From: Octopus bimaculoides | Lineage: Eukaryota | Assembly: GCF_001194135.2 (NCBI RefSeq) | Contig: NC_068992.1 | Coordinates: forward strand, 56,113,264-56,167,267 | Direction: 5' to 3' | DNA: 54,004 nt | In this document: positions 18,787 to 49,174 of the stretch, piece after piece | Position numbering within the stretch: position 1 is the stretch's first letter | How the letters are laid out: each line of letters begins with the position of its first letter | The notes under the pieces: generated by a model | Seen by the model: only the letters and a program-made list of their open reading frames with translations | The model's database searches: none | What the model was told of the DNA's origin: nothing | Program-made: the position numbers and the translations under genes

Positions 18787-18873
18787 TATATAATGGACTC
18801 AACCAGTACTTCATAGTTTTACGCATGCTCGTCTGACGTCCCGGTCAGATCACGACTTTGTGTTCAGGTAAGA
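18787..18873 (+). promoter_or_regulatory. Candidate GAPDH core promoter and non-coding first exon (TATATAA 18787-18793, Inr-like TAGTT near 18815, donor CAG|gtaaga at 18868)
   Basis: TATA about 28 nt before an Inr-like motif, CRE-like TGACGTC at 18834, a strong donor, and a CpG-retaining setting. The ATG exon has an acceptor, so an upstream exon must exist. Confidence 0.4.
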
Positions 18874-19515
18874 AGATGTCTCCTTAACACTCTCGCGCAG
18901 TTGTCATTTCTCTCTTTCTCTTATTGCTGTGTCTTGTTTATTCTTTAATTTATTCTCTACCACTGCCCTGTCACACTAGACACGTATAATAATGATTATC
19001 TGTTAATTCATGTTTATCTTATCGAGGAGGATTTTTTTTTGCTTGTCTTCCTTTTCTATAAATTTCTTTTAATTCTAGTTATTTCTTTTTTCCTAAATGT
19101 AATTATTCTCAAACCTTTTCCTTCACCACTCTACCCTTCTTTTTTTTTTTTTTGTCTGATCACTGACTCTTTCTCTCTCCTTTTTTTTTCTCTCATTTTC
19201 TCTTTCCCCCTTTCTGCTTCTGTCCCGTTTTTTCCCTCCCACTTTATCTCCCTCTCTCTGATTTTCCTCTTTTCTCTCTCCTCCTTACCCTTTCCCTTAG
19301 ACGTCATTCGTCCTTGACAATTATCTGTGACACGGATACCTTCGCCTTGTTCCTATTTATACATTAAAAAAACGCATCCAAAACCCAAAAACCCAATAAA
19401 TTCTATTATCCAAGCTATTTCAAATTATTCTTTTTTCAAAATCATTAAATGTTATTACGTATTTATATGTAAAGTGATGAGATTTTGTGGTGTTCATGCT
19501 TTCTGTTTTTGTTTC

Positions 19516-20332
19516 CTCAAGGACATTTGCGATATTTTAATTTTCTCAATATATGAACATATCTTCATTTCTTTAAAAAGAAATTCTCGAAATTTAAAAT
19601 AGCTAATATACATAATATATATTTAAGAATAAAAAATTCTAATGTAAGTTCAGTTGGCCGAGCACTGAGCTCTACTTTTGTTAGTGTTCTAACATATTTT
19701 ATTTAACATGAAATATTTAATTAAATATGGTAAAGCTTGCTTAGTATTAGCATCAGTGACGGATTTCGGCATATAAGGCTAAATGTTAGGACTTAGATCT
19801 GTAAAGGCTTGGAAATAAGTTGTATTAATTAGGACTTGGTGTAATTTTTAAATGGTAGTGGTGGTGGTGGTGAGGATGCAAAGTTAAGGCCTCATCGACT
19901 CATAAAGTGCCGAATTTAGACATAAAGGCCGGAAAACTCCGGTCGAGGGCCTCACAATGTGCACGGGGGCCTGAAAATGGATAAAAAGCCATGTTGTAAT
20001 TAAATACAAAAGATCGAAATCCTTGCAAGCTTTGTTATATCGAAGGACGTCACCGACACTAAATTCGGCACCAATTATGCACATAATAATTACATACATG
20101 TTAATTACCATTTTTTTTTTTTAATACTTAAGTTTTACGAGCTTAATAATGTATTCTTTTAGCTTTGAAATTAATTTGCAATCCCAATAAGTTCAATTAT
20201 TAATGAGACGTTTATGATAACGGAATTAAATGTTGGGTTTTAAATACGTGGAAGGTGTAAATTTTTATTGATATAATGTCGAAGTCTGTATAACCTATTT
20301 CCACCTATTGAAAAATCTTTTGTGTACATATT

Positions 20333-20367
<35 letters not shown>

Positions 20368-21339
20368 CATATGTGTAGTCATTGCTTTCTCCATTAAACT
20401 TTCTTTTATCTCTACCACCTTTAAATAAGAGAGATAAGGGCGTTTTGTTGTTTTTTCTTTAAAGTAGGCCGACCGACCATTAATTAAACGACCAGATTCA
20501 TAGAAATAATTAACAAAGGATCTTTTGTTAGTTTTTCGCACTTCTTCTTCATTGTTTAGCATTGATATATTTGTTCTGTGATATTTATTGCCTGTTATAG
20601 CCATTATTCTTCTCTTTCCTCTTTTTCTTGTTTTCCCTCCCAATCCTGCTAACTTGTCACGTACTTCCCCACACCTTTTAATAATGGCGTGTTCTCACTC
20701 TTTCAATAACTACGTAGCTGTTCGTTTCTATATTAACGGCGTTGATTATTTAATTCTAACCTTTTATTCTCTCTTTACTTAAACTAATCAGCTATTTTTT
20801 TTTAATTGTAAAAATTTCGGAGAAAAATTAATAAAAACGGCCTAGGATGTGATATGACCTTGAGTGCTTGGGGTGAAGGTCATATGGCGGTCGTTTCTTT
20901 TCTTTTTTTTTTTTTAGTCAAATTTGCTGCACCCATTTTCTTTTAAAATTTCTCTTTTTATTGTATGGCTTTTTCTTTTAATATTTATAGCCAATATTAC
21001 TTACTGCCAGTATTTTTTTCTTTTTGAAGCCTGGGAGAAATTAGTGTATAAGATGTATACCATTCTCAAGGACATTTAGCTAGCGACGTCATACAAAAGA
21101 GGAGGCATACTTTTAGTATGGTCTCTGTGCCTGCTAAAAATAGCAGTCAAATTTCCTTATCACAGATTAAAACAAAAATTGAAAGAACACGAAAGATAAG
21201 GCCATCTTAGATACACCTAAGATGGCATATCCTTCGGTAGGAACATCTTTGATGGTACTTTCGCTTGATCAGCACTGACATAGAACTGTTTGATCGGAGG
21301 AAATGATTCCATGAAGTTCATGCCTTTCTCAAGGTCATT
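19516..21339. promoter_or_regulatory. Cluster of extended nuclear-receptor half-sites (ERR/NR5A type)
   Basis: TGACCTTGA 20855-20863 (reverse TCAAGGTCA), TGAAGGTCA 20874-20882, TCAAGGTCA 21329-21337, TCAAGGACA 19517-19525 and 21066-21074. Confidence 0.45.
19907..20071. mobile_element. Possible short hAT-like MITE
   Basis: Perfect 13-bp inverted ends gtgccgaatttag / ctaaattcggcac with internal gggcctc/ggggcct motifs; no TSD found. Confidence 0.35.
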
Positions 21340-24300
21340 AAGCTATGTCGAGACGATCTCGAAGTTGTGTTTAAATTTAGAGATTGTCTGATGTTTTGTT
21401 AATCGTTATATAAACGTGGGGATTTTCCTATAGGAGCAGCAGCAATATTTAATATATTTCTGTCTGGAGAAAGTTTTTGCTCACATGATCATAGAATATC
21501 TTGGAAATGAAATAAAATTTATTGTCCATAGTCTTCAGTTCGATTTTAAGAGCTTAATTTATTTATGCTGTATATGGAGAGAAAATGTTTTAATGAAGCT
21601 TGCCTGGTGGTTTAAATATTTCTTTTCAGATACTCCCTTGTCAAACATTTTTTTTTATTTTGTCGAATGTTCAACGAATGTTTACATCAAGCTTGTAATT
21701 TTATCTCCATATACTTAGCTTACTTTTTAATATGTATCTTCGTACCTTTAAATTCATAAATTAAATCTCCATGCAATAATATATTCGTGTGTGTGTGTGT
21801 GTGTGGCTCGCGATTGTGCTTCTAGATTCTCCCATTGCATTCGATTTCAGATCTATCAAGTTTTGCTCTCCATCTCTCTAAATTTCAATTGGCATCTGTT
21901 AAATTTAAATTTCTTTTATTCGTTCACACACACACTGGGAGTGGGGGAAGTACTCAATACTGTTAGAATAACGTTCAAAACTGAGGATCGGAAACTAAAC
22001 TCCGAGTAGCGATTCCTTCAATCTCTGCTTTGAATACATGTATTCATTTCATGTTGTAGGCAATTCTTTTTTCTCAGTTTTGCCATTTTCATCTAATATG
22101 GTAATTCTTAGAACTTGATTTCTCCTTCATCCACCCGTCTATCGGTTTTCTTTCTCCCCCGCACTCTCAAGTCTGCTACTTCATCTTTTTTTTTTCATCC
22201 TGACATCGTTAATTTATTCTTTATCTCCTCATCACCCCCCTTCTCTGTACATCGTCTTATTTCCTCACTGTCTCTTTCTCCACCCTGATTTAGCTTCTCG
22301 AATTTCCTCTACATGTACTGCTGATAGGGTGGTAAGATTTGAGATGGTTAAGTAGAGAAAACAGCTTCTTCCCTGTTTTAGCTATCTCGTATAGTGTCAA
22401 ACTCTCCTTAACTTGCTTTCGTTTTATCTTCGAGGGGTACGTGGACATGACTTAAATACCCTCCATTACATTTCTGTAGACAGCTGGAATAGCTTGGTCT
22501 CATACTTTTGACCATAAAGAGATCAATATTTGCAGTTAATGCTCGAGAGATTCAAGCATTTGCATCTGCTTTTATTTCAATCGAAAGCTGGAACTGTCTA
22601 CTGCTTACTCTCTCTGCTTTTTCTCTATTTGTTGTGTGTGTCGCAGCCACTTTTTCTTTCTGCCTCCATGCACTTTTCATTTTTCTCTTTCCTGCATTCG
22701 TTCTCTCTCAATCTGCCTGTCTATCTACTCTATCCTACATTTGTCTTTGACTGTTTGTTCGTCTCCCTCTTCATTTAAACTGTCACCCTCTTTTTGCAGA
22801 CCCTTTGTGATATCCTCCTTTCACCATCCCTGTTTTTCTTTGTCACACACACACACACACACACACCTTATTAAATGCATATCCTATATTTTTCACATTT
22901 CCTTTCCTTTAACTTTGCACACCTGCCCCTTTGCTTTGTTTCATTTCCCCTTTCCCCTTACCCCTTCCCCTCTTTCACTTCACTGGATCAAAGACTTGTC
23001 CTTGCTTTTCCTTATTCATTTTCAGTTTCATTTCTCGACACTGAGACTTTTCAGAGAGCAGTCAAAGAAGTTATGGCACGATGCTTGGGCCGGTTGAATG
23101 AAACAAATCTAGGCCATGTACTTTTACAGGGCCCATTTGTTCAGACAGAACCTTATTGTTTGGGGCGAGGGGAAGGCAGGAGAATTAATGCCTCCTCTTG
23201 TCTGACTAGTTTGATGCTAAAAAATAAACTTATATATATAAAGACAATATTCTATTTATGCTAACATGGAAAGAAGCTTAGCAAGTTTTCTTTTGTTTTC
23301 TTTTTTTTTCTCTTTGTCTATGCCACATCTTCGAAAAGTATTGAAATATTAAAACCTGAAATGAAACCGTCTCGGTACTGATAATGTCCATGTTCATTGA
23401 ACATAACCCTTTTGTATTGAAGTGCTGATATTTATATATTGTTGGCTGTGAGGTTGTCTGACGGGGAATAAATAGCATCATTGATTCATATACATGAGCT
23501 AAAGATCTGTTAATTAGCTGATTATAATTAGTTATGGGGAGTTGGGGTTGAAGTTATGGTAGTTGTTTAGCCACAGGTCATCTCTGATCAAGTTGACCCA
23601 TGTCACAAATGTAGGTTCAACGACCAGGTGTCATCCAGATATTTGTTGCAGATCACTGGTGAACCATTTATAGATCAGTGTGTCAATTTTTGTTTCTTTA
23701 ATAATCCTGTTATTGATGTATCGTATATACATTTTCATTTTAGATAAGTGATATATAACCTATTCGAAATCTTTTTTTTCCTTCCAAAGTCCATTGTCAT
23801 CTAAAAACCTTCAGTGTGTCACTGACTCTTGTCACAGGTTTACTATTACTGCCCCTTGATACACCATATCTCTGCCAAGTTAAGGACTCCATCATGTAGT
23901 CAGCTTTTATGTGGTGTAGTGTCAGTCTGAGAATGTTCCAATTTTTTTTCCCATTTTTGTCTGTAGCTTGTGAGTTTTACTTTGATCAAATTAATTTTGA
24001 TGTTAGCTGGAGTAAGGGGGGAGAAGTCGAGGAGAAATAGGCTGTAGGGCTGCACATTGGAATTGTGTAATGCTTTATAAAAGTAAGTTCTAACTATGTC
24101 AGCTGCTGGGTTTCATACAGGATGTGCATTGTGATCTTGAGAAACATTGTGGCCAAGTGAACCGCCGCCCCCCCCCCACACACACACAAAAAAAGAACAA
24201 GTAAAATGAAAACTAAAGCAATCATATTGCCCAAAAACATCGATCAGTATATTTCAGTCATACAGTATTTTGGCTAGATCTGTTTTATTGTCATAGTGTA

Positions 24301-25320
24301 ATAGATTGGTGAGCTGGTATAGTGCATGACGGTAACAGATTTGAGATGAAGTAATGATATAGGGTCATTTAAAAAAAAACTGGACATTTGTGCAGAGGCA
24401 ATATTCCAGGTCTCCAGCCCTTGGTAAAATGAATTCAATGTGGTTTTTTTTTTACAATTCTTTTTTGATAATTTTTTTTCTGTATGCTATCTGAGGTGAA
24501 CAATCTACTTGTTAGCCTTATCTAATGCTTCTAAGGAACATTTTGCTTAGAGTGACTAATAAACTGTTTCATTAGTAATACTGACCTCTTGCATGTTCTT
24601 TATAATCTTTCTTCCAAGTAGTGTCCTTATAGTAATAAAACTTGCTAGATATTGCAACCAACAAGATTCACCCAAGTCGCACTCAACCATTTTAACTCCA
24701 TAATGTAAATTTACGTGCGCTGTTTACTCACTCTTCATCAGATGACAAATATACACAGCCCTATCTGCTGCGGTTTGTGTACCAGTTGATATAAATATCC
24801 GCTATCACTAATGGAATCGATATTAGAGGCCCCTGTGCAAATTTCAAGGAATCTGGTAGATTTGCTAGACTCCTGTAAATATTTCCTACTCAGTTTGAGA
24901 CTTCATTACCATAATTGTATAAAAGCGGCAGTTTTGGTGGTTACACCACTATGACTCCCTATCATATTTGTACACGTTCAACGAATTCTTCTGGTCCTTT
25001 ACAGAATTTATAGTTGCATCCAGCTATGCCAGTTTTGTTGAATATACAGTCTTTGCAGCGATGACAGTTTACATAAGTGAACAGTGCATGCTTTGAACTG
25101 TTGTGTGCTAATTGCTGATTTTGGCCAAGATGATTATCGTCAGTGCAACCCGGTTGCCTGATAAAGATCCGTTGTCATGGGGGTTAAAAGAAAAAAGAAA
25201 AAATGAAGGGCATTTTAGAATAAGTCCTAGAAACTCGTATAGACTGGTTGAATGGTCATTGCTTGAATGCTTTTGATCATAGATTTGCATGGCAGTAAAC
25301 AATAGCCTTCTTCCCTAATT

Positions 25321-25720
25321 GTAGAGGGAGCATGTGGAAGGTGTAGACCTAAGATGTAGGACAAAGTGGTGAGAAAGGGCCTACAGACTTTGGGACTAAC
25401 AGAGGGGATAACAGGGGACTGAGATTCCTGATAGTTTGCTGCGCTTGAAAAGACGCTTCAAGCTAAGTAAAAGCAAGCTTGGTTGCCCTTGCATACAGGC
25501 TCATTTCCTGCAACCCTCTCCAGCTGAGAATCCCTAATCTTGTGGGCTCATAGGTGCTGCATAGAAGAACCCATTACATTGTAAAGTGGTTGCTATTAGG
25601 AAGGGCAACCAGCCATAGAAACCATACCAAAACAGACATGGTACCTGAACAGCTGTTTAGCTAGTCAGCTCCTGTCCAACCCATGCCAGCATGGAAAATG
25701 AACGTTGAATGATGATGATG
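25321..25720 (+). mobile_element. 5'-truncated RTE-clade LINE (ORF end plus 3' UTR)
   Basis: The frame from 25321 reads VEGACGRCRPKM*DKVVRKGLQTLGLTEGITGD*DS**FAALEKTLQAK*, resembling the RTE GRGRPRKTW tail. It continues into the taggaaggg...catgccagcatggaaa...(gat)n tail. Confidence 0.7.
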
Positions 25721-26769
25721 CTTTAAGATGAAGTATTTTTCATCAGTATATTTGTAAATGAGTTCTACAAATGCTATAGCAATGTTGTCTTCCCAGGAGG
25801 CAATTGATAGGTCAGTAGTTAATGGTCTTTTATTCTAACTTGTATTTGGTTGTGTAGATTCTTACAAAAATTATTGTAGCAACTTCATGTAAATGAGGCA
25901 AAATATGAGAAAATTATGTGAAAATGTCCAACTGCAAGGAGTCAATATTCTTTTTGATACTGAGGACCTTTCACATCTTTCATTGAAGGCTGTTCTTGCA
26001 GATATTGAAGTTTGTTGCACTGTCTTGGTGTTGGATTTTTTCATTGTTCTCTTGTAATAAATATTGACTTTTATTTCAGTGTTAGTGCTTCAGTCTAGTG
26101 CTATCGAAACCAGTCTCGTGGTGAGGATCAAACTGATGGATAAATTTCACACCATATTATCTTTACATTCAAAACGAACCTAGACTCTTTCAGGGACAAT
26201 AAAACAAAAAAAAGCCAGAAGTAAAAATAATCTTTTGAAAAAACTCCAACCTAACAAAGACATTAATTTCACAGATAAAACAAATTCATCAAAATATTTT
26301 GTTCAGGAGAGGCGTAGGGTAAATCTTGATCTACCCCAACTTTTTTGTTTCGGCAAACAAAAGATTTATTTTAGAAACTTTTTTTTCTAAAGTGTTATTA
26401 GTCAGTATGACGAATGCCAGTCATTTAATTGTTGAATTAGTCTGAATAATGTAAATTATGAAATTGTTTGTAGTGGTTATTAATTACATAATTGCTTGCT
26501 GCATGAGACTGATAGATTGGTAGCATTCATTAACTGTTGGTTTGTATAGTTACTTATGCTACATATACGGCAGCCTGATATTGTAATTAACACTATTTGG
26601 TGTATATAGTCCCTTATTAATTTACTAGACTTAAAAAATATTAAACTCATTGACAATTTGTAGTTGCATTCTTAAACTCTTACCTACTTCCCCACTGTTC
26701 TGATAATCAGTACTGGTGAGAAATTAATCATCTTAAGCCAACTTAGCCGAATTGATTCCAGTGGCTACC

Positions 26770-26880
26770 ATGGCAGCACTTGATCCAGCTCTCCTGCAGA
26801 CAATAAAAACTGTTGTTTCGGAAGAAGTTAACCGTGCAGTCGAACCTCTGAGACAAGAGCTAAATCGTCTGCGAAGCAAG
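26770..26880 (+). CDS. Candidate upstream coding exon: 37-aa amphipathic helix MAALDPALLQTIKTVVSEEVNRAVEPLRQELNRLRSK, in frame with GAPDH if spliced to 36634
   Basis: Kozak gctaccATGG, phase-0 donor AAG|gtaaaa, locally higher GC and retained CpGs. The acceptor-proximal 12 nt TCTGTAAACAAA at 36634-36645 are open and in frame with the GAPDH ATG. Confidence 0.55.
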
Positions 26881-27395
26881 GTAAAAACTACATTTGATGT
26901 AGATCAAAACATTATCTGTATAAAGTGAGTACACGTAAATATACATATATATAGGTAGTAACTTGTCTTTTAAGACTTGTTTGATTATTGTTAATTATGA
27001 GTTATATAAATTAGCCTTACATTTGTTTTGTCTGTGAGTGAGGCATGCTGTTCTTTTGCCTTTGTCTATTTGACTGGCAAAAGATTCCACATTCACCACA
27101 AGCTTCAACCAATTCATGATTGGAAAGGCATACATGCAGCCAAACACTGTTGTAAAATAAGCCAAGGTTCGTGTGAAGTACATGGAAGATTTTGGCAAAT
27201 GCCACATGCTTACTCCTTGTCTTCACATGTTTTTAAAAATTTGTGTTCTGAAGAGGTGACTGACAGTTCTGTTGCAATGGATGCTCTATTTTTATCTAGT
27301 TTGATACTGCACTATTCCGAGTTCAAATTGCACCAGTGGTGACTCCTTTTTCTGTGATTGAAAACCTATCATTCATTATCTAATTTAACTCAAAT

Positions 27396-27475
27396 GACTC
27401 TTCTTTCACTGCCTCCTACAGGATTTGGCTCCATAGACTCTTCTTTCACTGCCTCCTACAGGATTTGGCTCCATA
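27396..27475. repeat. Perfect 40-bp tandem duplication
   Basis: gactcttctttcactgcctcctacaggatttggctccata occurs twice. Confidence 0.95.
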
Positions 27476-29789
27476 TCTATTTAAATAAGCATATTGAGTA
27501 ATTATCATGTCCTTTTAAAATCTTGGCACATTTTTGTTTTGATGCAATCTTGTAAATTCCTTATTTCTCAAAATGTCTCTCCAAGAAGAATCTTATCGAG
27601 AGTAACTTGCCTGTAACTGTTCGTCACAGAAAGGAGATGTCACATTGTTCCCTTTCCCCATTTCACTTTGGTGTTTCTGGTTAAATCGAATCCATTGCAG
27701 TGTCACAGCACAAGTGTTCTCATTGTGGCTCTTATTGAATTTTCTGTAAATAGTGTTCATGTTATTTTTCAATCCTTCAATTGAATTAAAAGTAATAAAA
27801 GAAAAAAATAACCCAGCATATTGCTTTTGAATTAACCAAAATTTTAATGTGGATGGTATTAGATTTAAGTATCAATTTGAAACAAAAGAGCAACAGTCCT
27901 CACCTGAAAGAGCAGTTTAGTTCACATACTTGCTATAAAAGAATTATTCTCTCAAGTAATTGAAAATAAAGTATCAGCGATATCTAGAATATAGAAGGTT
28001 AATCTTATTTTGCTGGTCTTTTTACCAGGCGAGTGTTTTGAGCTGAAACTGTTGAAACTAAAATGATTTACAGTATGGGAGAAACACGATAGATGCTTAA
28101 AAACTAACAGTATTAATTTCACTGAAACATTTGTTATGTGTTGTTACCAGGTCATTGTTCAAGCAACACAAATTTTGACATGACAAATGTTTGTGAAATT
28201 AAGTCTTTATTTTTGAATAGCTAATAGGTCTTCTGTGCTATAATAATTATTAGTCTCTTGATTTTGTCAAGAAAATAGATTTGTTTTTGAAATTTTGTAA
28301 ATTGCAAGCAATAGCATAACCGGTTGCAGGTTTCCAATTGATCACTGGTGCATTATTCTTCAACAGCAAGTGACATCAAAATGTCTTTGTAACTCAGGAT
28401 AGAATAAATGCCACAAGGTATTTATTTTGCATGTCCCATGTTAATCCGTTTTCTTGTCAATGTATATATTCCACTGGTATGCAACAGACTTCCACACTAT
28501 TCCTACAAACCAAATTCCACTGGTAGGAATTGGTTAAGCTGAAGCTATAAGAAAAGACACTTATCCAACCTGAGGTGCCGCATAGTAGGACTGAACCCAG
28601 AAATATCATTTGCAAAGTAAAGGTTTTGTGGAGAAGAAAATTGCTCTTTACATATAATCATCACTTTGTCTATTGATTGGGACCAGTTGTTCCAACTGGG
28701 AGAACTGACAGTTATTTACAATTATTGAATACTAAATGGATATGTTATTGCATAAACCTTGTTTTCAAGTCAGAATAGAAGAAAATAAAAGGAAACTTGT
28801 TTTCTGTATGTTTTTAAAATGGTTATTGGTTTCAGTGATTCACATAGGCATTAAGCTAACGTTCTTACATCATCCAGTTGTAAATTATAAATTAATATTA
28901 AATAGTATGTATGGAGTGTTCTGAAGAAATCGGGATTTTAGTGTTGAACCAAATCGCACTATGATGCCATTGCTATCAAAAGTTATCTCCCTTCCCTCAG
29001 TTTTCCAATCTGATGGCTGCTAAATGTATTACGGCTGTGTTGTCAACACATTGTATCATGGCTTAAAAGATGCACGAGCATATTAGAATGCAACTATTAT
29101 TTCAGCAGTGCATGTTTAGGTGGAGAGCAGGGAAAGGGTTTAATGCATCAAAGCCTATAAAGTAGGCGTCTCAATTTCTGACCTCATACCTAAATCAGAA
29201 ATCACAATTTGTATCAAGTGCAATTTGATGCATTGATAAATGTAGGTCACCTACTTAAACATTTTCAGAACATGTATTTAATTGCTTGGGTGATACATGC
29301 TAGTAATTAAACACATTTTAACAGGGAGTTTAGTAACTGAATGAGTACTCAATACTAGGTATAGAGTACATTTAAGTAAATTTTGGTTGAGCTCTTGTTG
29401 CCAGTCTTAGATCTCCTTAAGTAGAGCTGATCTACTGACATTCTTTGTCAGCTGGATCTCTGGCTGTGAGCCAGGATACAGGTACATATATAGATATAGC
29501 TATTTGGCTTTGACAAGGAATGCTTCTTATGTTCAGTCATTGCAACTACCTACTCAGTGTGAATGTCGAGTGTAGGACTGACAACTCCACACTAATTACA
29601 GGTATGGTTCATCTGGTGGTGGTCTGTCATACAGTGTCTCCCCACTTTCACTTGCAAGGTTTTTGTTGAATTGGGAACGTGGCAGAAAACTCTTGCAGCC
29701 TGGATTGATCTTAGAATCGCGTACACACACACACACACACACACAAAAGAAAAACTTAATTAGTGTTCCATGTATACTGTATCTTCTCT

Positions 29790-29961
29790 CTCTGCTTGTG
29801 TCATGGGACTGCAGCCATGCTGATGCACCACTTGGAAGGGTTTAGTGTAATAAATCAACCCCAGTACTTTTTTAAATGTCTGGTACTTATTCTATCAGAC
29901 TCACGTGAATTACTAAGTGATAAGGACATAAGCAAAACAATACTGATTGTGAAGTGATGGT

Positions 29962-30024
<63 letters not shown>

Positions 30025-30160
30025 CTTTCAGTTTCTGTCTTCCAAATCTACTCAAGTTTTTGGTTGGCTCAGGGCTATAGGAGAAGATGCTTGCTCAAGG
30101 TATCATGCAGTGGCACAGTCACCTAGTGGTTGGGTAACAAACTTACCACACGGCCATACC
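29790..30160 (-). mobile_element. tRNA-derived SINE, second family, with internal (CA)n
   Basis: Blocks match 3262-3596. Confidence 0.7.
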
Positions 30161-32419
30161 TGCTCCTTTATATACTTGCAATACAATAGATTGGATTTTC
30201 TCCTAAACATGAAAATTTAATTATCTTTTTTATGTTGCTAACAGTTGTTTTCCTTCTCCAACTAAGAAGTAGATTTCAGTTGAGGATCCTTTGCATGTCA
30301 TATCCACTACCACACAAATTTGTGTGTGTATTTTCTAGAATATAAATCGGATGTCTTCGAAAATATTTTAATGTTAAAAGGTATGGTTGAAGGAACCCAT
30401 GTATTACATTTACATTGTCCATTCTGATGTGATTTGAAATCAAAACCAGTTTTTAAAACTAATCATTTTCCATTGTTTTGAATGAGAGCAGATTAGCTGC
30501 AGATAAAGATATATGCTACTGAGGAACTTTTTAATGATTCTCAAAGGTAGAAGATTAGCTCAATCCAAATAGGCTGGATGGTCAATAACTAAAATTTAGT
30601 ATTAGTTAGATGTAATTATAGACCTGTATCAACATCGTTGAACATCCATTTGAGATGGTAAACTCCAATGGATCCACTAATAGAGCTAAATCTGTCAGTA
30701 TTATCAATTATGTAGAAAACCTGATATGACTTCAGATTAACTACAATAGTTTTTCCTATTTTGACTTAATTTTAAAGTAACTTGTTGAGTCACATAAGAT
30801 AGGCCATGGCTAAAAATACATGTGAGGTTATTGCTCTCTTTTGTTTTAAATTGTTGTTTGTAAGGTCCGGTGCCATTTACACTAAAATACAGGCAGTTAA
30901 GTGTGTTTCAAGTGTATTTTTTAATGTATGGAATGTCTCATAGTTTGTTACTTATCACAATTGCACTGTTCATGTTAAGTGACCTTATTTTTTGCTAAGG
31001 TATCTGGACAAAAACCAGCCAGTGAAATTGTACCTGTGGTAGGTATCTGCAATGAATTGCCGAGTTTCTAGATGGAATAAAAACTGCATGCTGGTTTGAA
31101 ATGTCTGAGTTAAATGTAGCAACAAGCTTTTATAATACATAACACCTGTAGTTGTGGGAAGCACTTCTATGGTGTACTTGGGATCTTGTGGCTGACAAGC
31201 TTTAAGTGCGATCACATTTCTAGCTTATTTGACTTTCTGGTCTAATTTTTAAATCAAATCTTAATTTAGGTAGGTTTCCCTTTCATAAACAATATTCAAG
31301 GATGGAGCACAATTCCTGCATTGTGTCTAGTCCTATGAATTGGCTCTTTCATAATGCTATCACTTTCTTCATTGTTGCTCTTCTCTTAATTTTCTGTGTT
31401 TCCCTTCTAAGGGACGGGCTGTTATTGTAAGTATGGAGGTACTTTTCCTTAAACAACTGAATTATGAAATCTTTTTAGCAATTTTTTTTTTACTCCATTC
31501 CACCCTCATAAACCAAACTCCAAATTGTTTAGTTCTGTGATGTCCATGTTATGTCTACCTTGTTTTTAAAATTTATATTTATCAATCTTGAATCAGCCTG
31601 TTAAACTGATCAGACTTCTGATGCTGACTTTACATTTAGTATAATAAACTTTGTATAAAAAAAAAATTTGAGGGTAGATGTTATCAGAATGGGTAGAATG
31701 TTAGACAAAATGCCATGCAATTTGGTTATCAAATTCTGAGTTTGATTCCTATCCAGTTTGACTGTATTGATGATGTCAGTGCCCTGACAAGACCAGTAAT
31801 TAGAACGAATAAGAGAAAATGAGTTGAAAAATGGAGAAAGCAGCAATGGTCTGCTCATAAGTTAATGCCCCTACCCTTGGGAATCATAGGAACATTTTTT
31901 TAGTACTTTTAGATCTATTTGATAATTGTAATTTTTTTATGTAACATTATGATGCTTTATTAATGCTATATTTTAATGTTTCTCTAATGGCCATTCTAAC
32001 GTAATTGTTTCCCTTGGAGAGAAAACCTACTCAACATAACACCTATATCTCTCTCTTTGTCTTAATGATTTTTTTGTTACTGGAAGGTAAAAAAAAAAAA
32101 AGATCCTTAACTGGATTGCATCTGAACAGGAACCATTAAAACGTTGAACACTGTAAAATTAAAATGGTCAAATTTCTATGTATATAAGACCCAATCTCAT
32201 AAGCATTCTAACATATAGACCAATGATACACACGGAAGGGCTTAAACACAAACAGAAGTGAACGGTCTTAATTGAAGAAACCTTTATGGTCAAAGTTTAA
32301 GATTATTGTACATCTGAGAGCTAGAGAAACTACTTAGTGCACTTGCAGTGTCTTTCTGTATCTTGTTTTCAGGATGTTCTAGATAGTGTTACCATTTCAA
32401 GAATATCCTCTCCTTAGTG

Positions 32420-32453
<34 letters not shown>

Positions 32454-33462
32454 GCACACGCACACGCACACGCGCACGCACACGCGCACGCGCACGCGCA
32501 CACACGCACACTGATATTGGGGGTTGTGTTATATACCTTGACCTGAGCATAGAACAGGGCTCACCTCTTTGAGCTGGGAAATGAATGGAATGCTTGGTGT
32601 GTCTTGTGGCTACTCCCCTCCTAAAAAATAAATGGGGAATAGGCTTGGGAATATAAATATATATCTATTGTATGTGTGTGTGTGTATATATAGACAAAAT
32701 TAGGCATGTAAGCTTAGGTCATAGGATGAATTTTTATTCCTCATTCTTTTGAACATATACAGCATTTTCTTAAAAATTATTCATTGCAGTTGTACTTAGG
32801 CTTATCTAAGTTTAATAATTTCCAAAATACATTTGCATAAATTTATTTTGGGTTGGATTACTTTAATATGTTGAACCATCTGGGGTAATTTGGGGAGCAA
32901 CAGTTCTTGGTGAATCAACATTCCCTGAAGATTGGTCAAATTGAGCTTCATGAATATTTACCAAAATAATTAAAATCCCCTGAGAAAATGTGCGCATATT
33001 TTTTTTCTCCTAAACACTTTCCTCCTCAAAATCAGGATAACTGTGTCCTGTTTGAGAAACGAGCCACAGGAGATGGGGTAGCCGATGCAGCAAGCGTTGC
33101 TGGTCATTCTCTGTGGTGAAGCCTTTGCAATCCTGTTCATGAGGTGCGATCAAACACCCCATTTGATCTCGTGTGTACAATGCATTACTCTCTCCCCTCA
33201 TCTTCTACTTAATCCCCCACTTTTTCGTTATTTCCTTGCTGAGGTAAAATTTTTTTTTTTCCTCGGTAATTTGATCTATACTTTTAAAGGTTTTATTTTT
33301 CTTTCTTTAAAAAAATGTTAAAGCCATATATATACCGAAAAAAAAAAAATTTACTTGATTATTTTAAAATTATTCTCGTGTTTATTGTTACTTGAGAGCT
33401 TGTTCTGTTAGGTGCCAACAAGAAACTTCAGAAACAGCAACAATATTCTGTGTCTCTTAAAA

Positions 33463-34040
33463 NNNNNNNNNNNNNNNNNNNNNNNNNNNNNNNNNNNNNN
33501 NNNNNNNNNNNNNNNNNNNNNNNNNNNNNNNNNNNNNNNNNNNNNNNNNNNNNNNNNNNNNNNNNNNNNNNNNNNNNNNNNNNNNNNNNNNNNNNNNNNN
33601 NNNNNNNNNNNNNNNNNNNNNNNNNNNNNNNNNNNNNNNNNNNNNNNNNNNNNNNNNNNNNNNNNNNNNNNNNNNNNNNNNNNNNNNNNNNNNNNNNNNN
33701 NNNNNNNNNNNNNNNNNNNNNNNNNNNNNNNNNNNNNNNNNNNNNNNNNNNNNNNNNNNNNNNNNNNNNNNNNNNNNNNNNNNNNNNNNNNNNNNNNNNN
33801 NNNNNNNNNNNNNNNNNNNNNNNNNNNNNNNNNNNNNNNNNNNNNNNNNNNNNNNNNNNNNNNNNNNNNNNNNNNNNNNNNNNNNNNNNNNNNNNNNNNN
33901 NNNNNNNNNNNNNNNNNNNNNNNNNNNNNNNNNNNNNNNNNNNNNNNNNNNNNNNNNNNNNNNNNNNNNNNNNNNNNNNNNNNNNNNNNNNNNNNNNNNN
34001 NNNNNNNNNNNNNNNNNNNNNNNNNNNNNNNNNNNNNNNN
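33463..34040. other. Assembly gap between the candidate upstream exon and the GAPDH ATG exon (other gaps: 5831-5840, 7167-7469, 8361-8370, 9828-10083, 34929-34938, 49729-49913, 51073-51932)
   Basis: Runs of N. Confidence 0.99.
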
Positions 34041-34177
34041 ATATTCAATAAGACATTCAATACTTCATTTCATTGTACCATCCATTTTTATATTATATAT
34101 TCCATATTCTATATCCCACATTAATTTTACAAGAATATAAATAAAACATAAAAAACAGAGTAGGAATTCTTTTAAAT

Positions 34178-34211
<34 letters not shown>

Positions 34212-35550
34212 CTTTGTTAATGTTAGACTTTTCTAAAGTCATCGAGTTGCTAAGCTGATATTTTGATGTATAAAAATCATGTTTAAAAATCTGCAAACAC
34301 GTTATTGGATTTTTAAACATCACAGTGGTTCCTATATTACAAAATCTAAAATATATTGCTTTTTAATTTGTATTCATTTCCTAACTTGACATTTTCCTGT
34401 TTTTAATGTTCACTACATTAAATTTAATAGCTGTGTGTGTACAGAAAAGTGAAGTGAAAACTATGCGCAGTTGACACACTTAAGCAGTCACTGAAATTTT
34501 TTCTGAAATGAAAGCTTACAAGGCCGAATCTATATGAATCACTTAATGTTTAACTTTTTTCCTGCATTGTTCAATTTTAGAAGTGATTCGGTCAAAGTGG
34601 TGTAACACTTTGACTAGTTCAATCCTAGATGAGGTTTTGCTAATTACAAACCAGTCTTTTCCTCCAATCTTACTGGAATGTATTGTTTACTTGAGTTCAA
34701 TGAGACTCCTGAAACAAGAATTCAGCATTTAACAACTGAAAGTTAAAATGAAAAAAAAAAAGAAAAAAAAACCAGTGAAAATAAAACTAAATATAGTTGG
34801 CTTTGTTCATAGTTTCTAAAATTGATTAGCTTTATGATGATATTTGTGGGAATTGGTAAATATAAACAGGGAGATTCTTACATTTAGTTGGAGTAATTTT
34901 TGTATTTTAAAAATTAAATTGTGATGACNNNNNNNNNNTTTATCAGTTGTGCATGTTCTGTTAAAAAGAAAAATCAAACTCAACTCCATTGCTATCAAAT
35001 AAAATTGCATTTCATTATTGAAGTTATTATATGTTTGTTCAGGTGTTTTTGTGTCTTGTATTTTCTTACAGAAAATGTACGTAAAGTTTGTTTCTTCTAT
35101 TTAAATTTTAGAAAATCTGCCAAGAAACCTGAGAATACCATCAAAACTTTTATAGTTAGGGGCCTCTGTTGGTTTGGGATGATCAGTTATCTGCACACAT
35201 CTAGGCTTGGGCAACACTTTTTTGAGAAAGACTGGCAGTTCCCTGTGTATGCAAATATCTCCACCTCACTGATGTTATCCATTGAAAAAGCTGATTTAAA
35301 CAGATTCGTGCCCAACACTAAAATTTCTAATTGACCAGGAAAAGTTGACTTTGGGTCATCTTGAACTTGGAGTATAGTTAAATTCCACGAGACCTTTTAA
35401 TCTGTTACTATACAAAATACTGTTCAATGTTGTGCTGGGGCTTTCTTTTGGTTTCCATGGTTTTATGCAAATGAAATAAATCTCCTTAGGTAAGATGGAT
35501 GCCAATCAATTGAAATATTTTCTGCAGCTAGCATTGACCTTCACACTGCC

Positions 35551-35593
<43 letters not shown>

Positions 35594-36175
35594 GTTTTAA
35601 CAGTGATATTTGCTTATAGTGAACTAATACAACCCTTGCACCTACTCTGTAAGATGGACTCAACCTTTCACAAAAGGTTTTGGTTGTAACATTGCAATGC
35701 TTCGTCAGCAACTCCTAGATCTACACAGGTATGATGGGTTTTGATAGACAGGGTATCATTGTACCAACATCAGATGAACTACAAGTCTCCTAACTTTACA
35801 TAATCATGATAGAAACTAACAAAGTATCCAGAATATGAAATGAAATACAAGGCCACAATTTTACTTAGGGACATTGATAATATTCGTCTGAATATATGTA
35901 GATGTGCCAACAAAACTTTCATAGGAAAAACTGTAAGGTGTTGTAAACAGTTTAAATAGTTGGTTACAAAGGAAAATATTGCAAGCTATGATTGAGGTGC
36001 TTCCCCACTGTCAACTCAGTTATATGCAGTCAATATCCTGCATTATATATTCCTTGAAAGAGATGGGTTTACAAATGTTGAAAATAGGGACCTTGGTTCA
36101 AAATTCTCACTACACTTTGCTGTAATCCATTCTACTCTGCTACAGTTCTGGCTCCATGTACAGCATTAGTGACAG

Positions 36176-36375
36176 AAAAACAAACAAAAACAATCCCAAC
36201 ATCGCTTGACAACCGATGCTGGTGTGTGTACGTCCCGTAACTTAGCTGTTCGGCAAAAGAGACCGATAGAATAAGTACTAGGCTTCCAAAGAATAAGTCC
36301 TGGGGTCGATTTGCTCGACTAAAGGTGCTGCTCCAGCATGGCCAGTCAAATGACTGACACAAGTAAGAGTATTGA
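36176..36375 (+). mobile_element. SINE second-family 3' half, fairly young
   Basis: catcgcttgacaaccgatgctgg...ggcaaaagagaccgatagaataagtactagg; CpGs retained. Confidence 0.75.
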
Positions 36376-36645
36376 TATTTATTTTGACTCCCTTTACTTT
36401 CCAGAAGGAATGAATTCTTTTGCATCCGCACGTGCATGCGTGCGTGTGTGTGCATGCATGTGTCCACATGCGTGTACGTATGGGCATGTGTGCACATGTA
36501 CACGAGTCTATTTTGAGTGAATCCAAATAAAAGCTTTCTACAAAGACAATGTTAATAGTCTGTTTTACAGGTACTAATTTTGAAACGCTGATATATTTAA
36601 AAATATTAATTTATATTTTCTTGTTTCTTCCAGTCTGTAAACAAA

Positions 36646-46931
<10,286 letters not shown>

Positions 46932-47789: not shown

Positions 47790-49174
47790 TATAAAAAATC
47801 TACTGGCTATAGGAATTGACAATGCTAGAGTAATGATAGGAATCAACAATGGTGTTTTCCAGAAATTAAAATAAGTTCCATTATTACTTCTATTAAGATG
47901 TGTATGCCATTCTTTACAGTTGGCAGTATCCCACACTTGTGCTGAAAGCTTGCCTATAAATTTAGAATTTTTGGTATCCAAAACCTCTACAAACAACTTT
48001 ACCTTGCTATCAATGCTAAAGAACCTTTGAAGATCGTGAATTCTTTTACAACTAGGTGGCTGTCAATAGAACCAGTGGTAAATAGTATTTTAAGTCAATG
48101 GTTTGAATTGCAAACTCGCTTCCAAACTACAACTACAAAAGAAAAATGCTTTACAGCACAAACGTTACATAAAATGCTTTGTGATTCTAGGAATGAACTT
48201 TTTATTTTGGCATCCAATTTTAAAACATGTTCAGGAAGTGAATAAACTGTTTGAACCAAACACTGTTGACAGCAAAACTACTTGATGATCCTTCAAATCT
48301 GTTACATCATATGATAGTGTTGCCAACATGTAGACTTGATCTGGATGCTTTTATTGAAAAATTTCCAGATCCCAAACCAAATTTAGGCTACAATTTCGAG
48401 AGAAAGATAGCAGAAATGATTACCAAGAAGACTAACAGCCACCAAAGAAAGTAATATTCACATAAGAGCACAAAAATTTTTTCTTTGCTCTTTTATAAAG
48501 AGCTCAGATACAGTTTGCCAGGAAATATTAATATATTGACGAATAACAAATGTTTTTCAGTAGAGAATATTTAGCAACATTTCAAAGAGCCAATTTACCT
48601 GTCTTAGAAGCATGCATTTAAAGGAGGAAAAAATTACTTCAATTGAAATTCAGTTTAATAACATTCATTTAGTTAAATGGACAAATGCATCTAATACTGA
48701 GGCATTCTGGCTGGAAGTCTTGGAATATAAAGATGCTACTGGAGGAAATCCTTTCTAGAGATGTTACAAATTTTGCCATTAATCTACTGACATTGCCAAA
48801 CTCAAATGCAGAAGTTGAATGGCTGTTCAGTAGTATGGGTGTAATCAAATCAAAATTGAAAAGCAAAATGCATCTTCCTACGCTTGGATCAATACTGTCT
48901 ATAAAATATGGCCTGAAAAGATATGGCAAATGTTGCAAAAACTTCAATATTCCAAAGCAATTAACAAGATTGAGACCATGAATGTATACAGAAGTCAGGA
49001 CCTAGGCACTGCAGCTGAACGTGATCAGATCAGTGAAATTCAAGAAATTATTTCTCAATGCTGAATATAATTTAAGAAAGTGAATAAAAATTAAGCTTTT
49101 TGATATAATTAGTCTTTAGCATTTTTTTTCTACTGAAATTTTGCATAAAATTCTGATTTTAGTTGGCAACACTG
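47790..49174 (+). mobile_element. Decayed hAT-superfamily transposon
   Basis: Frameshifted peptides LLAIGIDNARVMIGINNG, TTRWLSIEPVVNSILSQW and LLTLPNSNAEVEWLFSSMGVIKSKLKSKM (hAT dimerisation domain); 3' terminus ttggcaacactg at 49163-49174. Confidence 0.8.

What the first reader, a model, noticed from the sequence alone, without database searches (positions are those of the whole stretch)
26770..36645. Hidden upstream exon that would give GAPDH a 41-aa coiled-coil-like N-terminal extension
Seen: 26770-26880 encodes MAALDPALLQTIKTVVSEEVNRAVEPLRQELNRLRSK from a strong Kozak ATG (gctaccATGG) to a phase-0 donor (AAG|gtaaaa). It has five CpGs in 26819-26873 inside an otherwise CpG-poor intron. The GAPDH ATG exon starts at 36634 with TCT GTA AAC AAA ATG, open and in frame, so a direct splice yields ...[19 protein letters not shown] (378 aa). 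Hydrophobic residues fall at 8,12,16,20,24,27,31,34 (4-4-4-4-3-4-3 spacing), an amphipathic oligomerisation-type helix. Unspliced, the ORF is only 52 aa (stop at 26926-26928), so the ORF track misses it. Known: mammalian sperm GAPDHS carries an N-terminal anchoring extension, but it is proline-rich and belongs to a paralogue. Inference: one locus may make both a housekeeping and a tethered or oligomerising GAPDH through an alternative first or cassette exon, possibly tissue-specific (sperm, muscle, nerve). I know of no description of this in cephalopods but cannot search.
Basis: partly seen in the sequence, partly recalled or inferred. Interest (0 to 1): 0.85.

Follow-up and report, generated by a model that had tools for sequence, protein, structure and literature searches.

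The report
Helix-tag cassette exon of octopus GAPDH
The upstream exon is real: octopus, cuttlefish and squid-like GAPDH genes carry a conserved, alternatively spliced exon that puts a 37-residue helix on the front of the enzyme, but the isoform is already in the public gene annotation and nobody seems to have studied what it does.

Summary
26770-26880 (+) encodes MAALDPALLQTIKTVVSEEVNRAVEPLRQELNRLRSK and ends at AAG|gtaaaa. Joined to 36634 it gives a 378-aa GAPDH.

That product is residue-for-residue RefSeq XP_052828151.1, "GAPDH isoform X2 [Octopus bimaculoides]". The window is identical to that species' assembly GCA_001194135.2.

It gives isoform X1 (391 aa). The 337-aa form is X3.

Homologous extensions occur in O. 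sinensis, O. vulgaris, Acanthosepion pharaonis and Sepia esculenta. They also occur in unnamed decapodiform-like RNA contigs. 22 of the 37 residues are invariant.

Cuttlefish RNA contigs join one 5'UTR exon to the helix exon, to the mini-exon, or to the ATG exon. So the helix exon is a cassette exon behind one promoter.

Both cassette exons are 100% identical in nucleotides between two Octopus species, against 89-99% for the body exons. Helix dN/dS is about 0.1-0.3.

The assembly gaps are intronic and do not matter.

AlphaFold2 predicts helix 6-39, a disordered linker, then the enzyme. The hydrophobic pattern is 11-residue-like, not heptad.

The function (docking or tethering) is inferred, not tested. 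I found no paper that describes the extension.

Real, conserved, already annotated, uncharacterised.

The parts
18789..18867 (+). Putative promoter-proximal TATA-like box (tatataat, from about 18789) and non-coding exon 1 of GAPDH, ending at the donor CAG|gtaaga after 18867. The transcription start is not determined.
   Evidence: Sequence. The stretch is 94% identical to O. sinensis, with the TATA box and donor conserved, and the intron just downstream falls to 60-70%. A 5'UTR exon 1 is shown directly only in cuttlefish contigs. In this window it is inferred.
26711..26880 (+). Helix cassette exon (exon 2): 59 nt of 5'UTR followed by the coding part. The 5' border (cag|TACTGG) is inferred. The 3' border is AAG|gtaaaa.
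   Evidence: The cuttlefish exon starts at cag|GGGTGATAG, 50 nt before its ATG. I judged that by eye to match the octopus TACTGGTGAGAAA. There is no ATG in 26711-26769.
26770..26880 (+). Coding part of the helix exon: 37 codons, MAALDPALLQTIKTVVSEEVNRAVEPLRQELNRLRSK. The start codon sits in an ACCATGG context.
   Evidence: identical to the N-terminus of XP_052828151.1, XP_014791243.1 and the O. sinensis and O. vulgaris models. 111/111 nt are identical to O. sinensis. 22 of 37 residues are invariant across coleoid sequences. dN/dS is about 0.1-0.3.
31000..31038 (+). 39-nt mini cassette exon (exon 3), VSGQKPASEIVPV, phase 0/0, bordered by ...gctaag| and |gtaggt. Present in isoform X1 (391 aa) and skipped in X2 (378 aa). 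It forms part of the flexible linker.
   Evidence: 39/39 nt are identical to O. sinensis, and the flanking 50-nt windows from about 30800 to 31199 are 94-100% identical. An octopus RNA contig, L002, joins it to the ATG exon.
33463..34040 (.). Assembly gap (N run), intronic.
   Evidence: Collinear with gap-free O. sinensis on both sides. No exon of any isoform maps there.
34929..34938 (.). Assembly gap (10 N), intronic.
36634..36677 (+). Exon carrying the canonical GAPDH ATG (36646). The 12 nt before it (TCTGTAAACAAA) are 5'UTR in the short form. They read SVNK in the extended forms.
38836..46931 (+). The nine remaining GAPDH coding exons: 38836-38932, 40031-40137, 40664-40754, 41897-42012, 43020-43158, 44771-44865, 45122-45200, 45914-46095 and 46856-46931 (stop included).
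   Evidence: The translation equals XP_014791244.1 (337 aa). Relatives carry Pfam Gp_dh_N and Gp_dh_C.

Best explanation
The window is the Octopus bimaculoides GAPDH locus. The flagged ORF is the coding part of a conserved, alternatively included cassette exon (exon 2) in the 5' region of the gene.

Shown:
- When exon 2 is included, its AUG (ACCAUGG context) lies upstream of the canonical AUG and in frame with it.
- The 39-nt mini-exon and the 12 nt ahead of the canonical AUG are stop-free and multiples of three.
- The predicted proteins are therefore GAPDH with 54 extra N-terminal residues (exons 2+3+4, 391 aa) or 41 extra (exons 2+4, 378 aa).
- Skipping exon 2 gives the ordinary 337-aa enzyme.
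- In cuttlefish, the same 5'UTR exon is spliced to the helix exon, to the mini-exon, or straight to the ATG exon. Splicing, not an alternative promoter, selects the N-terminus there.
- The helix exon is under purifying selection across octopods and decapodiforms. Between Octopus species it is even more conserved in nucleotides than the enzyme-coding exons.

Predicted: the extension is one amphipathic helix (residues 6-39) on a disordered, sequence-variable linker of about 17-20 residues.

Inferred, not tested: the helix is a docking or self-association module. Because GAPDH is a tetramer, it would put four such handles on each enzyme particle. That would tether GAPDH to a partner structure or bundle tetramers together, without changing catalysis.

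My confidence is about 0.95 for the gene-structure part and about 0.45 for the docking or tethering function. The figure given below is for the statement that this is a real, conserved, protein-coding cassette exon of GAPDH.
For: - Identity to annotated isoforms. The fusion equals P0126 = XP_052828151.1, and the 337-aa product equals P0129 = XP_014791244.1. X1 (XP_014791243.1) includes the mini-exon found at 31000-31038.
- Source. The window is identical to GCA_001194135.2 CM046612.1.
- Homologous extensions occur in O. sinensis X1/X2, O. vulgaris CAI9731264, A. pharaonis CAE1257488 and many Logan, JGI and MERC RNA contigs.
- Alignment: 22 of 37 helix residues are invariant, while the linker is variable.
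- Splice junctions from RNA contigs: exon 1 to the helix exon (L017, L008), exon 1 to the mini-exon (L018), and exon 1 to the ATG exon (L019, L020). The junction from the mini-exon to the ATG exon is seen in an octopus contig.
- Conservation. Helix 111/111 nt and mini-exon 39/39 nt, against 88.8-98.7% in the body exons, with conserved flanking intron.
- Selection. Helix dN/dS is 0.11-0.15 for octopus versus decapodiform and 0.27 for Sepia versus L004. The body gives 0.07-0.09.
- AlphaFold2: helix 6-39 with 10-residue block means of pLDDT 67, 81, 78 and 60 over residues 1-40; linker 39-57 below 50.
- The invariant hydrophobic residues fall on an 11-residue a/d/e/h stripe, 10 of 12 positions hydrophobic.
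Against: - No transcript or peptide from O. bimaculoides itself was available here. The RefSeq models are computational predictions.
- The link from exon 1 to exon 2 in octopus is inferred from cuttlefish.
- No peptide-level proof of translation was found. The one proteomics paper that cites XP_014791243 uses it only as a GAPDH identifier.
- From the window alone the ORF is no better than about 20 chance 'virtual exons' in the same intron.
- For the functional part: no partner, no localisation and no oligomer data.
- The amphipathic moment is only modestly above shuffles: 189 of 5000 shuffles reach it at 100 degrees.
- The monomer AlphaFold2 model says nothing about self-association.
- The only Argonauta hians entry in the hit list lacks the extension.
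Confidence: 0.93

Rival explanations
1. The exon is transcribed and spliced, but it is effectively a 5'UTR or regulatory exon. Its ORF would be incidental or act as an overlapping upstream ORF that tunes GAPDH translation. No stable extended protein would matter.
For: No peptide evidence was found. The nucleotide-level ultra-conservation, including synonymous sites and flanking intron, could reflect RNA or splicing signals rather than protein.
Against: At deep divergence the synonymous sites are saturated (dS 1.4-1.8) while amino acids are kept (dN about 0.2), with 22 of 37 residues invariant. The frame to the canonical AUG is preserved in every lineage although linker lengths differ (39+12 nt in Octopus, 45+9 nt in Sepia). 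An in-frame AUG in a strong context with no stop yields an extended protein by ordinary scanning.
Confidence: 0.04
2. The extension is a membrane- or lipid-binding amphipathic helix that recruits GAPDH to vesicles or membranes, rather than a protein-protein docking or oligomerisation helix.
For: The periodicity is nearer 3.67-4.0 residues than 3.5. From my own knowledge, 11-residue periodicity is typical of lipid-binding amphipathic helices such as apolipoproteins, perilipins and alpha-synuclein. Crustacean GAPDH isoform X1 models carry an N-terminal MGxxxS motif, which looks like a myristoylation signal (my reading). If so, membrane anchoring of GAPDH through alternative N-termini may recur.
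Against: The helix is short (about 34 residues) and has five acidic residues and a net charge of only +1. Polar positions such as D5, Q10, E18, E19, N21, E30, N32 and R35 are strictly invariant. That looks more like a specific protein interface than a generic lipid-binding face.
Confidence: 0.15
3. The helix folds back on the enzyme as an intramolecular regulatory element, analogous in logic to the C-terminal extension of chloroplast GapB or to CP12. It would modulate activity or cofactor access rather than location.
For: A flexible linker of 17-20 residues would allow the helix to reach the enzyme surface. The helix is highly conserved.
Against: AlphaFold2 gave only moderate confidence for the helix and very low confidence for the linker. 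I could not inspect contacts or PAE. There are no cysteines or redox motifs in the helix.
Confidence: 0.08
4. The ORF is a chance open frame in intron 1, or a fragment of a transposon or of another gene.
For: The intron holds about 20 comparable chance ATG...GT virtual exons. Transposase remnants occur elsewhere in the window.
Against: The peptide is single-copy in the window. It has no Pfam or PDB relatives. A HMMER scan of 1.84 billion representatives found only a squid-like GAPDH fragment plus two internally repetitive proteins. RNA contigs and gene models of several species join it to GAPDH.
Confidence: 0.01

Closest known systems
RefSeq and GenBank gene models: GAPDH isoforms X1, X2 and X3 of Octopus bimaculoides (XP_014791243.1, XP_052828151.1, XP_014791244.1); O. 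sinensis X1-X3; O. vulgaris CAI9731264.1; Acanthosepion pharaonis CAE1257488.1
   Same: They are the same thing. X1 adds the 13-residue mini-exon.
   Different: Nothing differs in sequence. These are database predictions with no functional description. I found no paper that discusses the extension.
Mammalian sperm-specific GAPDHS (from my own knowledge: a proline-rich N-terminal extension anchors the enzyme to the fibrous sheath of the flagellum)
   Same: A glycolytically competent GAPDH body carries an extra N-terminal segment that is not needed for catalysis. In GAPDHS that segment localises the enzyme.
   Different: GAPDHS is a separate paralogous gene, and its extension is proline-rich and non-helical. 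Here a single gene uses a cassette exon, and the extension is an amphipathic helix with only two prolines. The two extensions show no obvious sequence similarity. Tissue specificity is unknown here, and the long form looks common in cuttlefish RNA assemblies.
N-terminally extended GAPDH 'isoform X1' models of decapod crustaceans (Macrobrachium nipponense, M. rosenbergii, Penaeus japonicus)
   Same: They are predicted alternative N-terminal extensions on an otherwise ordinary invertebrate GAPDH.
   Different: Their extensions are long (about 75-115 residues), Ser/Pro/Glu/Gln-rich and disordered-looking. They start with MGxxxS, which resembles a myristoylation signal (my reading). They are not homologous to the cephalopod helix.
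Coiled coils with 11-residue (hendecad) repeats, and 11-residue amphipathic helices (from my own knowledge)
   Same: Hydrophobic residues sit at 9/12/13/16, 20/23/24/27 and 31/34/35/38, which is an a/d/e/h pattern over three 11-residue turns.
   Different: There are only three repeats and an invariant Pro26 lies inside the helix. No self-association has been tested. This is a resemblance in pattern only.

Membership tests
Glyceraldehyde-3-phosphate dehydrogenase (phosphorylating, type I) | Gp_dh_N and Gp_dh_C domains with the catalytic SNASCTTNC motif and an intact full-length ORF | tested here: met
   Ten coding exons with AG/GT borders give 337 aa containing SNASCTTNC. The sequence is 74-91% identical to animal GAPDHs, all of which carry PF00044 and PF02800.
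Alternatively spliced cassette exon | Flanked by a usable acceptor and donor; transcripts from the same upstream exon exist both with and without it | tested here: met
   Donor AAG|gtaaaa and acceptor cag|TACTGG. In cuttlefish, exon 1 is joined to the helix exon, to the mini-exon or to the ATG exon in separate RNA contigs. For octopus this rests on RefSeq isoforms X1/X2/X3, not on reads I could see.
Alternatively spliced cassette exon | Raised conservation of the exon and its flanking intron, as is typical of regulated alternative exons | tested here: met
   Helix CDS 111/111 nt and mini-exon 39/39 nt are identical between O. bimaculoides and O. sinensis. About 50 nt of intron after the helix exon are 100% identical, and the 50-nt windows from about 30800 to 31199 around the mini-exon are 94-100% identical. 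Body exons are 88.8-98.7% identical.
Protein-coding exon under purifying selection | dN/dS well below 1 and reading frame kept across lineages | tested here: met
   Helix dN/dS is 0.11-0.15 (octopus versus decapodiform, dS saturated) and 0.27 (Sepia versus L004). The frame is kept despite different linker lengths. The sample is small: 37 codons.
GAPDHS-type sperm GAPDH | Encoded by a separate paralogous gene | tested here: not met
   There is one GAPDH exon set in the window, and the extension comes from its own 5' cassette exon.
GAPDHS-type sperm GAPDH | Proline-rich N-terminal extension | tested here: not met
   Only 2 prolines in 37 residues, and the segment is predicted helical.
GAPDHS-type sperm GAPDH | Testis or sperm-restricted expression and binding to a flagellar structure | not testable with these tools
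   No tissue-resolved expression data were available. The long form was assembled from an S. esculenta RNA run and in 47 cuttlefish contigs.
Canonical heptad (left-handed) coiled coil | Hydrophobic residues at a and d of a continuous 3.5-residue repeat | tested here: not met
   The best register fills 7 of 11 a/d positions. The hydrophobic moment at 102.9 degrees is 0.57-0.66, against 1.28-1.31 at 98.2 degrees, and the maximum lies at 90-95 degrees. Pro26 is invariant. No dedicated coiled-coil predictor was available.
Canonical heptad (left-handed) coiled coil | Self-association into a dimer, trimer or tetramer | not testable with these tools
   Only monomer AlphaFold2 was available.
AKAP-type RII-binding amphipathic helix | Motif [AVLISE]-x-x-[AVLIF]-[AVLI]-x-x-[AVLI]-[AVLIF]-x-x-[AVLISE] (recalled from memory) | tested here: not met
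   I checked the 37 residues by hand. No register satisfies all six positions.
Mitochondrial presequence, signal peptide or N-myristoylation signal | A basic, acid-free amphipathic N-terminus; or a hydrophobic core; or Gly2 | tested here: not met
   There are five acidic residues, a net charge of +1 and Ala at position 2. I found no long uninterrupted hydrophobic stretch in the sequence.

The most novel reading that the evidence does not exclude
Coleoid cephalopods may route much of their GAPDH through a lineage-specific helix-tagged form, which appears to be the commoner assembled mRNA in cuttlefish. The invariant amphipathic helix on a flexible linker would act as a four-per-tetramer docking handle. 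It would hold glycolysis at a particular cellular structure, such as the cytoskeleton, transport vesicles or muscle, or assemble tetramers into higher-order particles. Exon skipping would release the free enzyme. That would be a splicing-controlled solution independent of mammalian GAPDHS, and it is undescribed in the searchable literature.
Probability: 0.35. Interest if true: 0.6.

Novelty: already known. Interest (0 to 1): 0.35.

Why it matters
As a genome feature it adds nothing new. The exon and all three isoforms are already in RefSeq and GenBank.

As biology it is a small open question. GAPDH is one of the most conserved and most-used 'housekeeping' enzymes. Yet here a helix tag, more conserved between Octopus species than the enzyme itself, has been kept since octopods and decapodiforms split. 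It is switched on and off by splicing.

If it tethers or bundles the enzyme, it would be a second, independent example (after mammalian sperm GAPDHS) of spatially anchored glycolysis through an N-terminal add-on.

There is also a practical point. GAPDH is the default reference gene and loading control in cephalopod work. Primers, antibodies and expected band sizes should take the 337, 378 and 391-aa forms into account.

Tried and rejected
1. A protein word-index search with the 41-aa extension alone found nothing, although identical proteins are in the collection.
2. The third protein search, with an N-terminal profile (A1), returned only short GAPDH fragments and not even the known extended proteins. 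It was useless for mapping the taxonomic breadth (Nautilus, other molluscs).
3. HMMER of the 37 residues against 1.84 billion representatives gave one squid-like GAPDH fragment and two internally repetitive proteins, whose E-values are inflated by 5-7 repeated stretches. This gave no clue to the exon's origin.
4. Pfam and PDB sequence searches of the extension gave only sub-threshold noise.
5. Exact look-ups of P0004 and P0126 for their contigs were not on record. The look-up of P0127 returned the same assembly with the same gaps, so the gaps could not be filled. I used O. sinensis instead.
6. I considered a transposon or other-gene origin. The peptide is single-copy in the window, so I rejected this.
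7. I checked and rejected a heptad coiled coil, an AKAP motif, a mitochondrial presequence, a signal peptide and a myristoylation signal (and inspection by hand).
8. The SWIB-domain gene seen upstream of cuttlefish GAPDH in contig L008 has no counterpart in this window.
9. The odd C-terminal tail of the 481-aa O. vulgaris model (P0130) has no separate counterpart here. It matches only the normal exon at 45986-46096.
10. Literature searches by topic, by tryptic peptide and by accession found no description of the extension. The supplements of the one paper citing XP_014791243 hold no extension peptides.

Full report
**1. The observation**

The sequence is as described.
- An ATG at 26770 (gctaccATGG) opens 37 codons, MAALDPALLQTIKTVVSEEVNRAVEPLRQELNRLRSK. 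They end at AAG|gtaaaa after 26880, and read-through stops at 26926-26928.
- The exon carrying the GAPDH start codon begins at 36634, after ...ttccag. TCT GTA AAC AAA ATG is open in frame.
- I fixed the borders by eye and by script. There are ten coding exons, 36646..46931, all with AG/GT borders, giving 337 aa. The splice 26880^36634 gives 378 aa.

From the window alone the ORF is not statistically remarkable.
- Intron 1 (18868-36633) holds 14 ATG-ORFs of at least 52 codons on this strand.
- It holds 20 ATG-ORFs with a phase-0 GT after at least 37 codons.
- CpG o/e in the coding part is 0.82, against 0.42 for the intron and 0.24 for the GAPDH body. That is suggestive but rests on five CpGs.
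- The peptide is single-copy in the window.

**2. What it is**

A search with the hypothetical 378-aa fusion returned cephalopod GAPDH proteins that cover 99-100% of the query, including the extension. Reading them, and their cluster members, settled the matter.
- RefSeq lists three O. bimaculoides isoforms: X1 (XP_014791243.1, 391 aa), X2 (XP_052828151.1, 378 aa) and X3 (XP_014791244.1, 337 aa).
- My fusion is identical to X2, and my 337-aa product is identical to X3.
- The locus returned for X1 is GCA_001194135.2, CM046612.1:56130033-56170194. It is base-for-base identical to the window, gaps included.
- X1 differs from X2 by 13 residues, VSGQKPASEIVPV. I found these at 31000-31038 as a 39-nt exon between ...gctaag| and |gtaggt.

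**3. The gaps**

Both N runs (33463-34040 and 34929-34938) lie between the mini-exon and the ATG exon, so they are intronic. The O. sinensis locus (L021) has no Ns. It aligns collinearly on both sides of both gaps. All twelve coding exons of its X1 isoform map outside the gap-equivalent stretch. Continuity across the gaps therefore has no bearing on the frame.

**4. Conservation**

Extended GAPDHs with a homologous N-terminus occur in:
- O. sinensis (X1 389 aa, X2 376 aa) and O. vulgaris (CAI9731264);
- Acanthosepion pharaonis (CAE1257488, 389 aa);
- a Logan contig from run SRR19578110, which a paper lists among its Sepia esculenta reads;
- several unnamed decapodiform-like clusters from Logan, JGI and MERC.

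An alignment of seven N-termini shows 22 of the 37 helix residues invariant: M1 A3 L4 D5 P6 A7 L8 Q10 I12 V15 V16 E18 E19 N21 A23 P26 L27 E30 L31 N32 L34 R35. It also shows an invariant V38, followed by a variable Ser/His/Gly-rich linker.

Between O. bimaculoides and O. sinensis:
- the helix CDS is 111/111 nt identical and the mini-exon 39/39 nt;
- the GAPDH body exons are 88.8-98.7% identical;
- about 50 nt of intron after the helix exon are 100% identical, and the 50-nt windows from about 30800 to 31199 around the mini-exon are 94-100% identical.

Nei-Gojobori estimates:

| Comparison | Helix dN/dS | Body dN/dS |
|---|---|---|
| Octopus versus decapodiform (dS 1.4-1.8, saturated) | 0.11-0.15 | 0.07-0.09 |
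| Sepia contig versus decapodiform contig L004 | 0.27 | 0.07 |

The linker changes length between lineages (39+12 nt in Octopus, 45+9 nt in Sepia). It is always a stop-free multiple of three. This is a protein-coding exon under purifying selection.

**5. How the isoforms are made**

Cuttlefish RNA contigs give the junctions directly.
- One 5'UTR exon, ending ...CTTAACCGAAG, is joined to the helix exon (L017). L008 uses an acceptor 3 nt upstream, a NAGNAG pair.
- The same exon is joined straight to the mini-exon (L018).
- The same exon is joined straight to the ATG exon (L019, L020).
- Several contigs (L010-L014) instead run into unspliced intron upstream of the helix exon.

So in cuttlefish the helix exon is an internal cassette exon behind one promoter, not an alternative first exon.

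In the window:
- The corresponding acceptor is most likely cag|TACTGG at 26710/26711, judged by eye against the cuttlefish exon start.
- There is no ATG in 26711-26769.
- A plausible exon 1 with a TATA-like box ends at CAG|gtaaga after 18867. It is 94% identical to O. sinensis, while the intron beyond falls to 60-70%.
- An octopus meta-transcriptome contig (SRR3401912) confirms the junction from the mini-exon to the ATG exon. At its 5' end it carries retained intron.

Including exon 2 places a strong-context AUG upstream of the canonical AUG and in frame with it. By ordinary scanning, that mRNA should yield the extended protein. This last step is inference. I found no peptide evidence.

**6. 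Abundance**

In the cuttlefish cluster the long form (P0146) was seen on 47 contigs, in 48 index blocks. The short form (P0147) was seen on 3. Across the four decapodiform clusters, 17 entries are long-form by sequence or length and 4 are short. Assembly counts are only a rough proxy, but they argue against a rare, niche isoform in decapodiforms. I have no such data for octopus.

**7. What the extension looks like**

- AlphaFold2, run on a 23-sequence alignment, predicts a single helix over residues 6-39. Block-mean pLDDT over residues 1-40 is 67, 81, 78 and 60.
- A disordered linker follows (39-57, pLDDT below 50), then a confident GAPDH fold.
- The heptad reading is weak. The best register fills 7 of 11 a/d positions. 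The hydrophobic moment is low at 102.9 degrees (0.57-0.66) and higher at 98.2 degrees (1.28-1.31), with its maximum at 90-95 degrees.
- The invariant hydrophobic residues fit an 11-residue a/d/e/h pattern at 9/12/13/16, 20/23/24/27 and 31/34/35/38, with 10 of 12 positions hydrophobic.
- Pro26 is invariant.
- There is no Pfam or PDB relative, and no non-GAPDH relative among 1.84 billion representatives.
- By inspection it is not an AKAP-type helix, a mitochondrial presequence, a signal peptide or a myristoylation site.

**8. Most likely mechanism**

Shown or directly supported: a splicing-selected N-terminal module made of a helix and a flexible linker, on an otherwise ordinary GAPDH.

Inferred: a conserved, specific polar and hydrophobic surface on a tether suggests a docking or self-association handle. 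GAPDH is tetrameric (established knowledge), so there would be four handles per particle. My estimates:

| Reading | Probability |
|---|---|
| Docking or tethering, or higher-order assembly | about 0.45 |
| Lipid or membrane binding | about 0.15 |
| Intramolecular regulation | about 0.08 |
| Non-protein (UTR or upstream-ORF) role | about 0.04 |

**9. Comparison with known things**

- The exon and isoforms are members of the public annotation. They are identical to it.
- Functionally the nearest analogue is mammalian GAPDHS (own knowledge). Membership fails on both testable defining features: GAPDHS is a separate paralogue, and its extension is proline-rich.
- Decapod crustacean 'isoform X1' models carry unrelated extensions beginning MGxxxS. 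This hints that alternative N-termini on invertebrate GAPDH recur.

**10. Novelty and verdict**

- It is already annotated. O. bimaculoides X1 was cited as a 'PREDICTED' RefSeq entry in a 2019 proteomics paper, purely as a GAPDH identifier.
- I found no paper that describes or discusses the extension.
- I score the feature as already known. It keeps moderate residual interest because the biology of a coleoid-wide, ultra-conserved helix tag on GAPDH is unexplored.
- Taxonomic breadth beyond coleoids could not be tested (one search failed, and no mollusc genome collection was available).

Noticed in passing
window 38836-46931 versus L021 22550-34710: The GAPDH body differs unusually much between the two Octopus species for such a conserved enzyme. 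Across the ten body exons Nei-Gojobori gives dN 0.051 and dS 0.151, so dN/dS is about 0.34. The same body gives 0.07-0.09 in deeper comparisons. Meanwhile the two 5' cassette exons have no nucleotide change at all.
   Followed up: partly
proteins P0038, P0061 and P0080: RefSeq 'isoform X1' GAPDH models of decapod crustaceans (Macrobrachium nipponense, M. rosenbergii, Penaeus japonicus) carry long, disordered-looking N-terminal extensions. They start MGVIASK... or MGAITSR..., which looks like an N-myristoylation signal. They are unrelated to the cephalopod helix.
   Followed up: no
window 52361-52660 and 52945-53364 (+); 48685-48981 (+): Transposase remnants lie downstream of GAPDH. One is a pogo/Tigger-like pair: CENP-B_N (E 2e-4) and DDE_1 (E 1e-25). 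The other is a weak hAT C-terminal dimerisation fragment (E 9e-4, below Pfam's cut-off).
   Followed up: partly
L008 464-1147 (-), cuttlefish Logan contig SRR31864755_30785: A 227-aa acidic protein with a SWIB domain is encoded head-to-head about 150 nt upstream of the cuttlefish GAPDH 5'UTR exon, on one RNA-derived contig. This may be a bidirectional promoter or a chimeric assembly. No counterpart exists in the octopus window.
   Followed up: partly
L008 versus L017, just upstream of the helix-exon 5'UTR: The cuttlefish helix exon uses a NAGNAG tandem acceptor (tag|CAG|GGGTGA). Contigs differ by the 3-nt CAG in the 5'UTR.
   Followed up: no
L002 1-200 (octopus meta-transcriptome SRR3401912) = window 30854-30999: An RNA contig starts in the intron upstream of the mini-exon and then splices normally to the ATG exon. 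This is either retained intron from pre-mRNA or a minor internal transcription start. The ORF caller's 'MTLFFAK' N-terminus of P0136 is translated intron.
   Followed up: partly
protein P0130 (O. vulgaris CAI9731263, 481 aa): A second O. vulgaris GAPDH model carries a 92-residue C-terminal tail with a degenerate copy of the '...FDAxAG...TFVKLVxW' exon. Nothing corresponding lies downstream of GAPDH in this window or in the O. sinensis locus. It is probably a gene-model artefact or an O. vulgaris-specific partial duplication.
   Followed up: partly
protein P0007 (Argonauta hians 'GAPDH-like isoform X1', 334 aa): The only Argonauta entry among the top hits lacks the helix extension although it is labelled isoform X1. 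I do not know whether Argonauta has lost the exon, has it unannotated, or whether this is a paralogue.
   Followed up: no
tool behaviour: The word-indexed protein search missed proteins that contain the 37-residue query exactly. With an N-terminal profile it returned only short fragments. Negative results from that tool for short queries should not be read as absence.
   Followed up: yes
window 18825-18836: If exon 1 starts upstream of 18825, it contains a minimal upstream ORF, ATG CTC GTC TGA. The transcription start is not known, so this may lie outside the mRNA.
   Followed up: no
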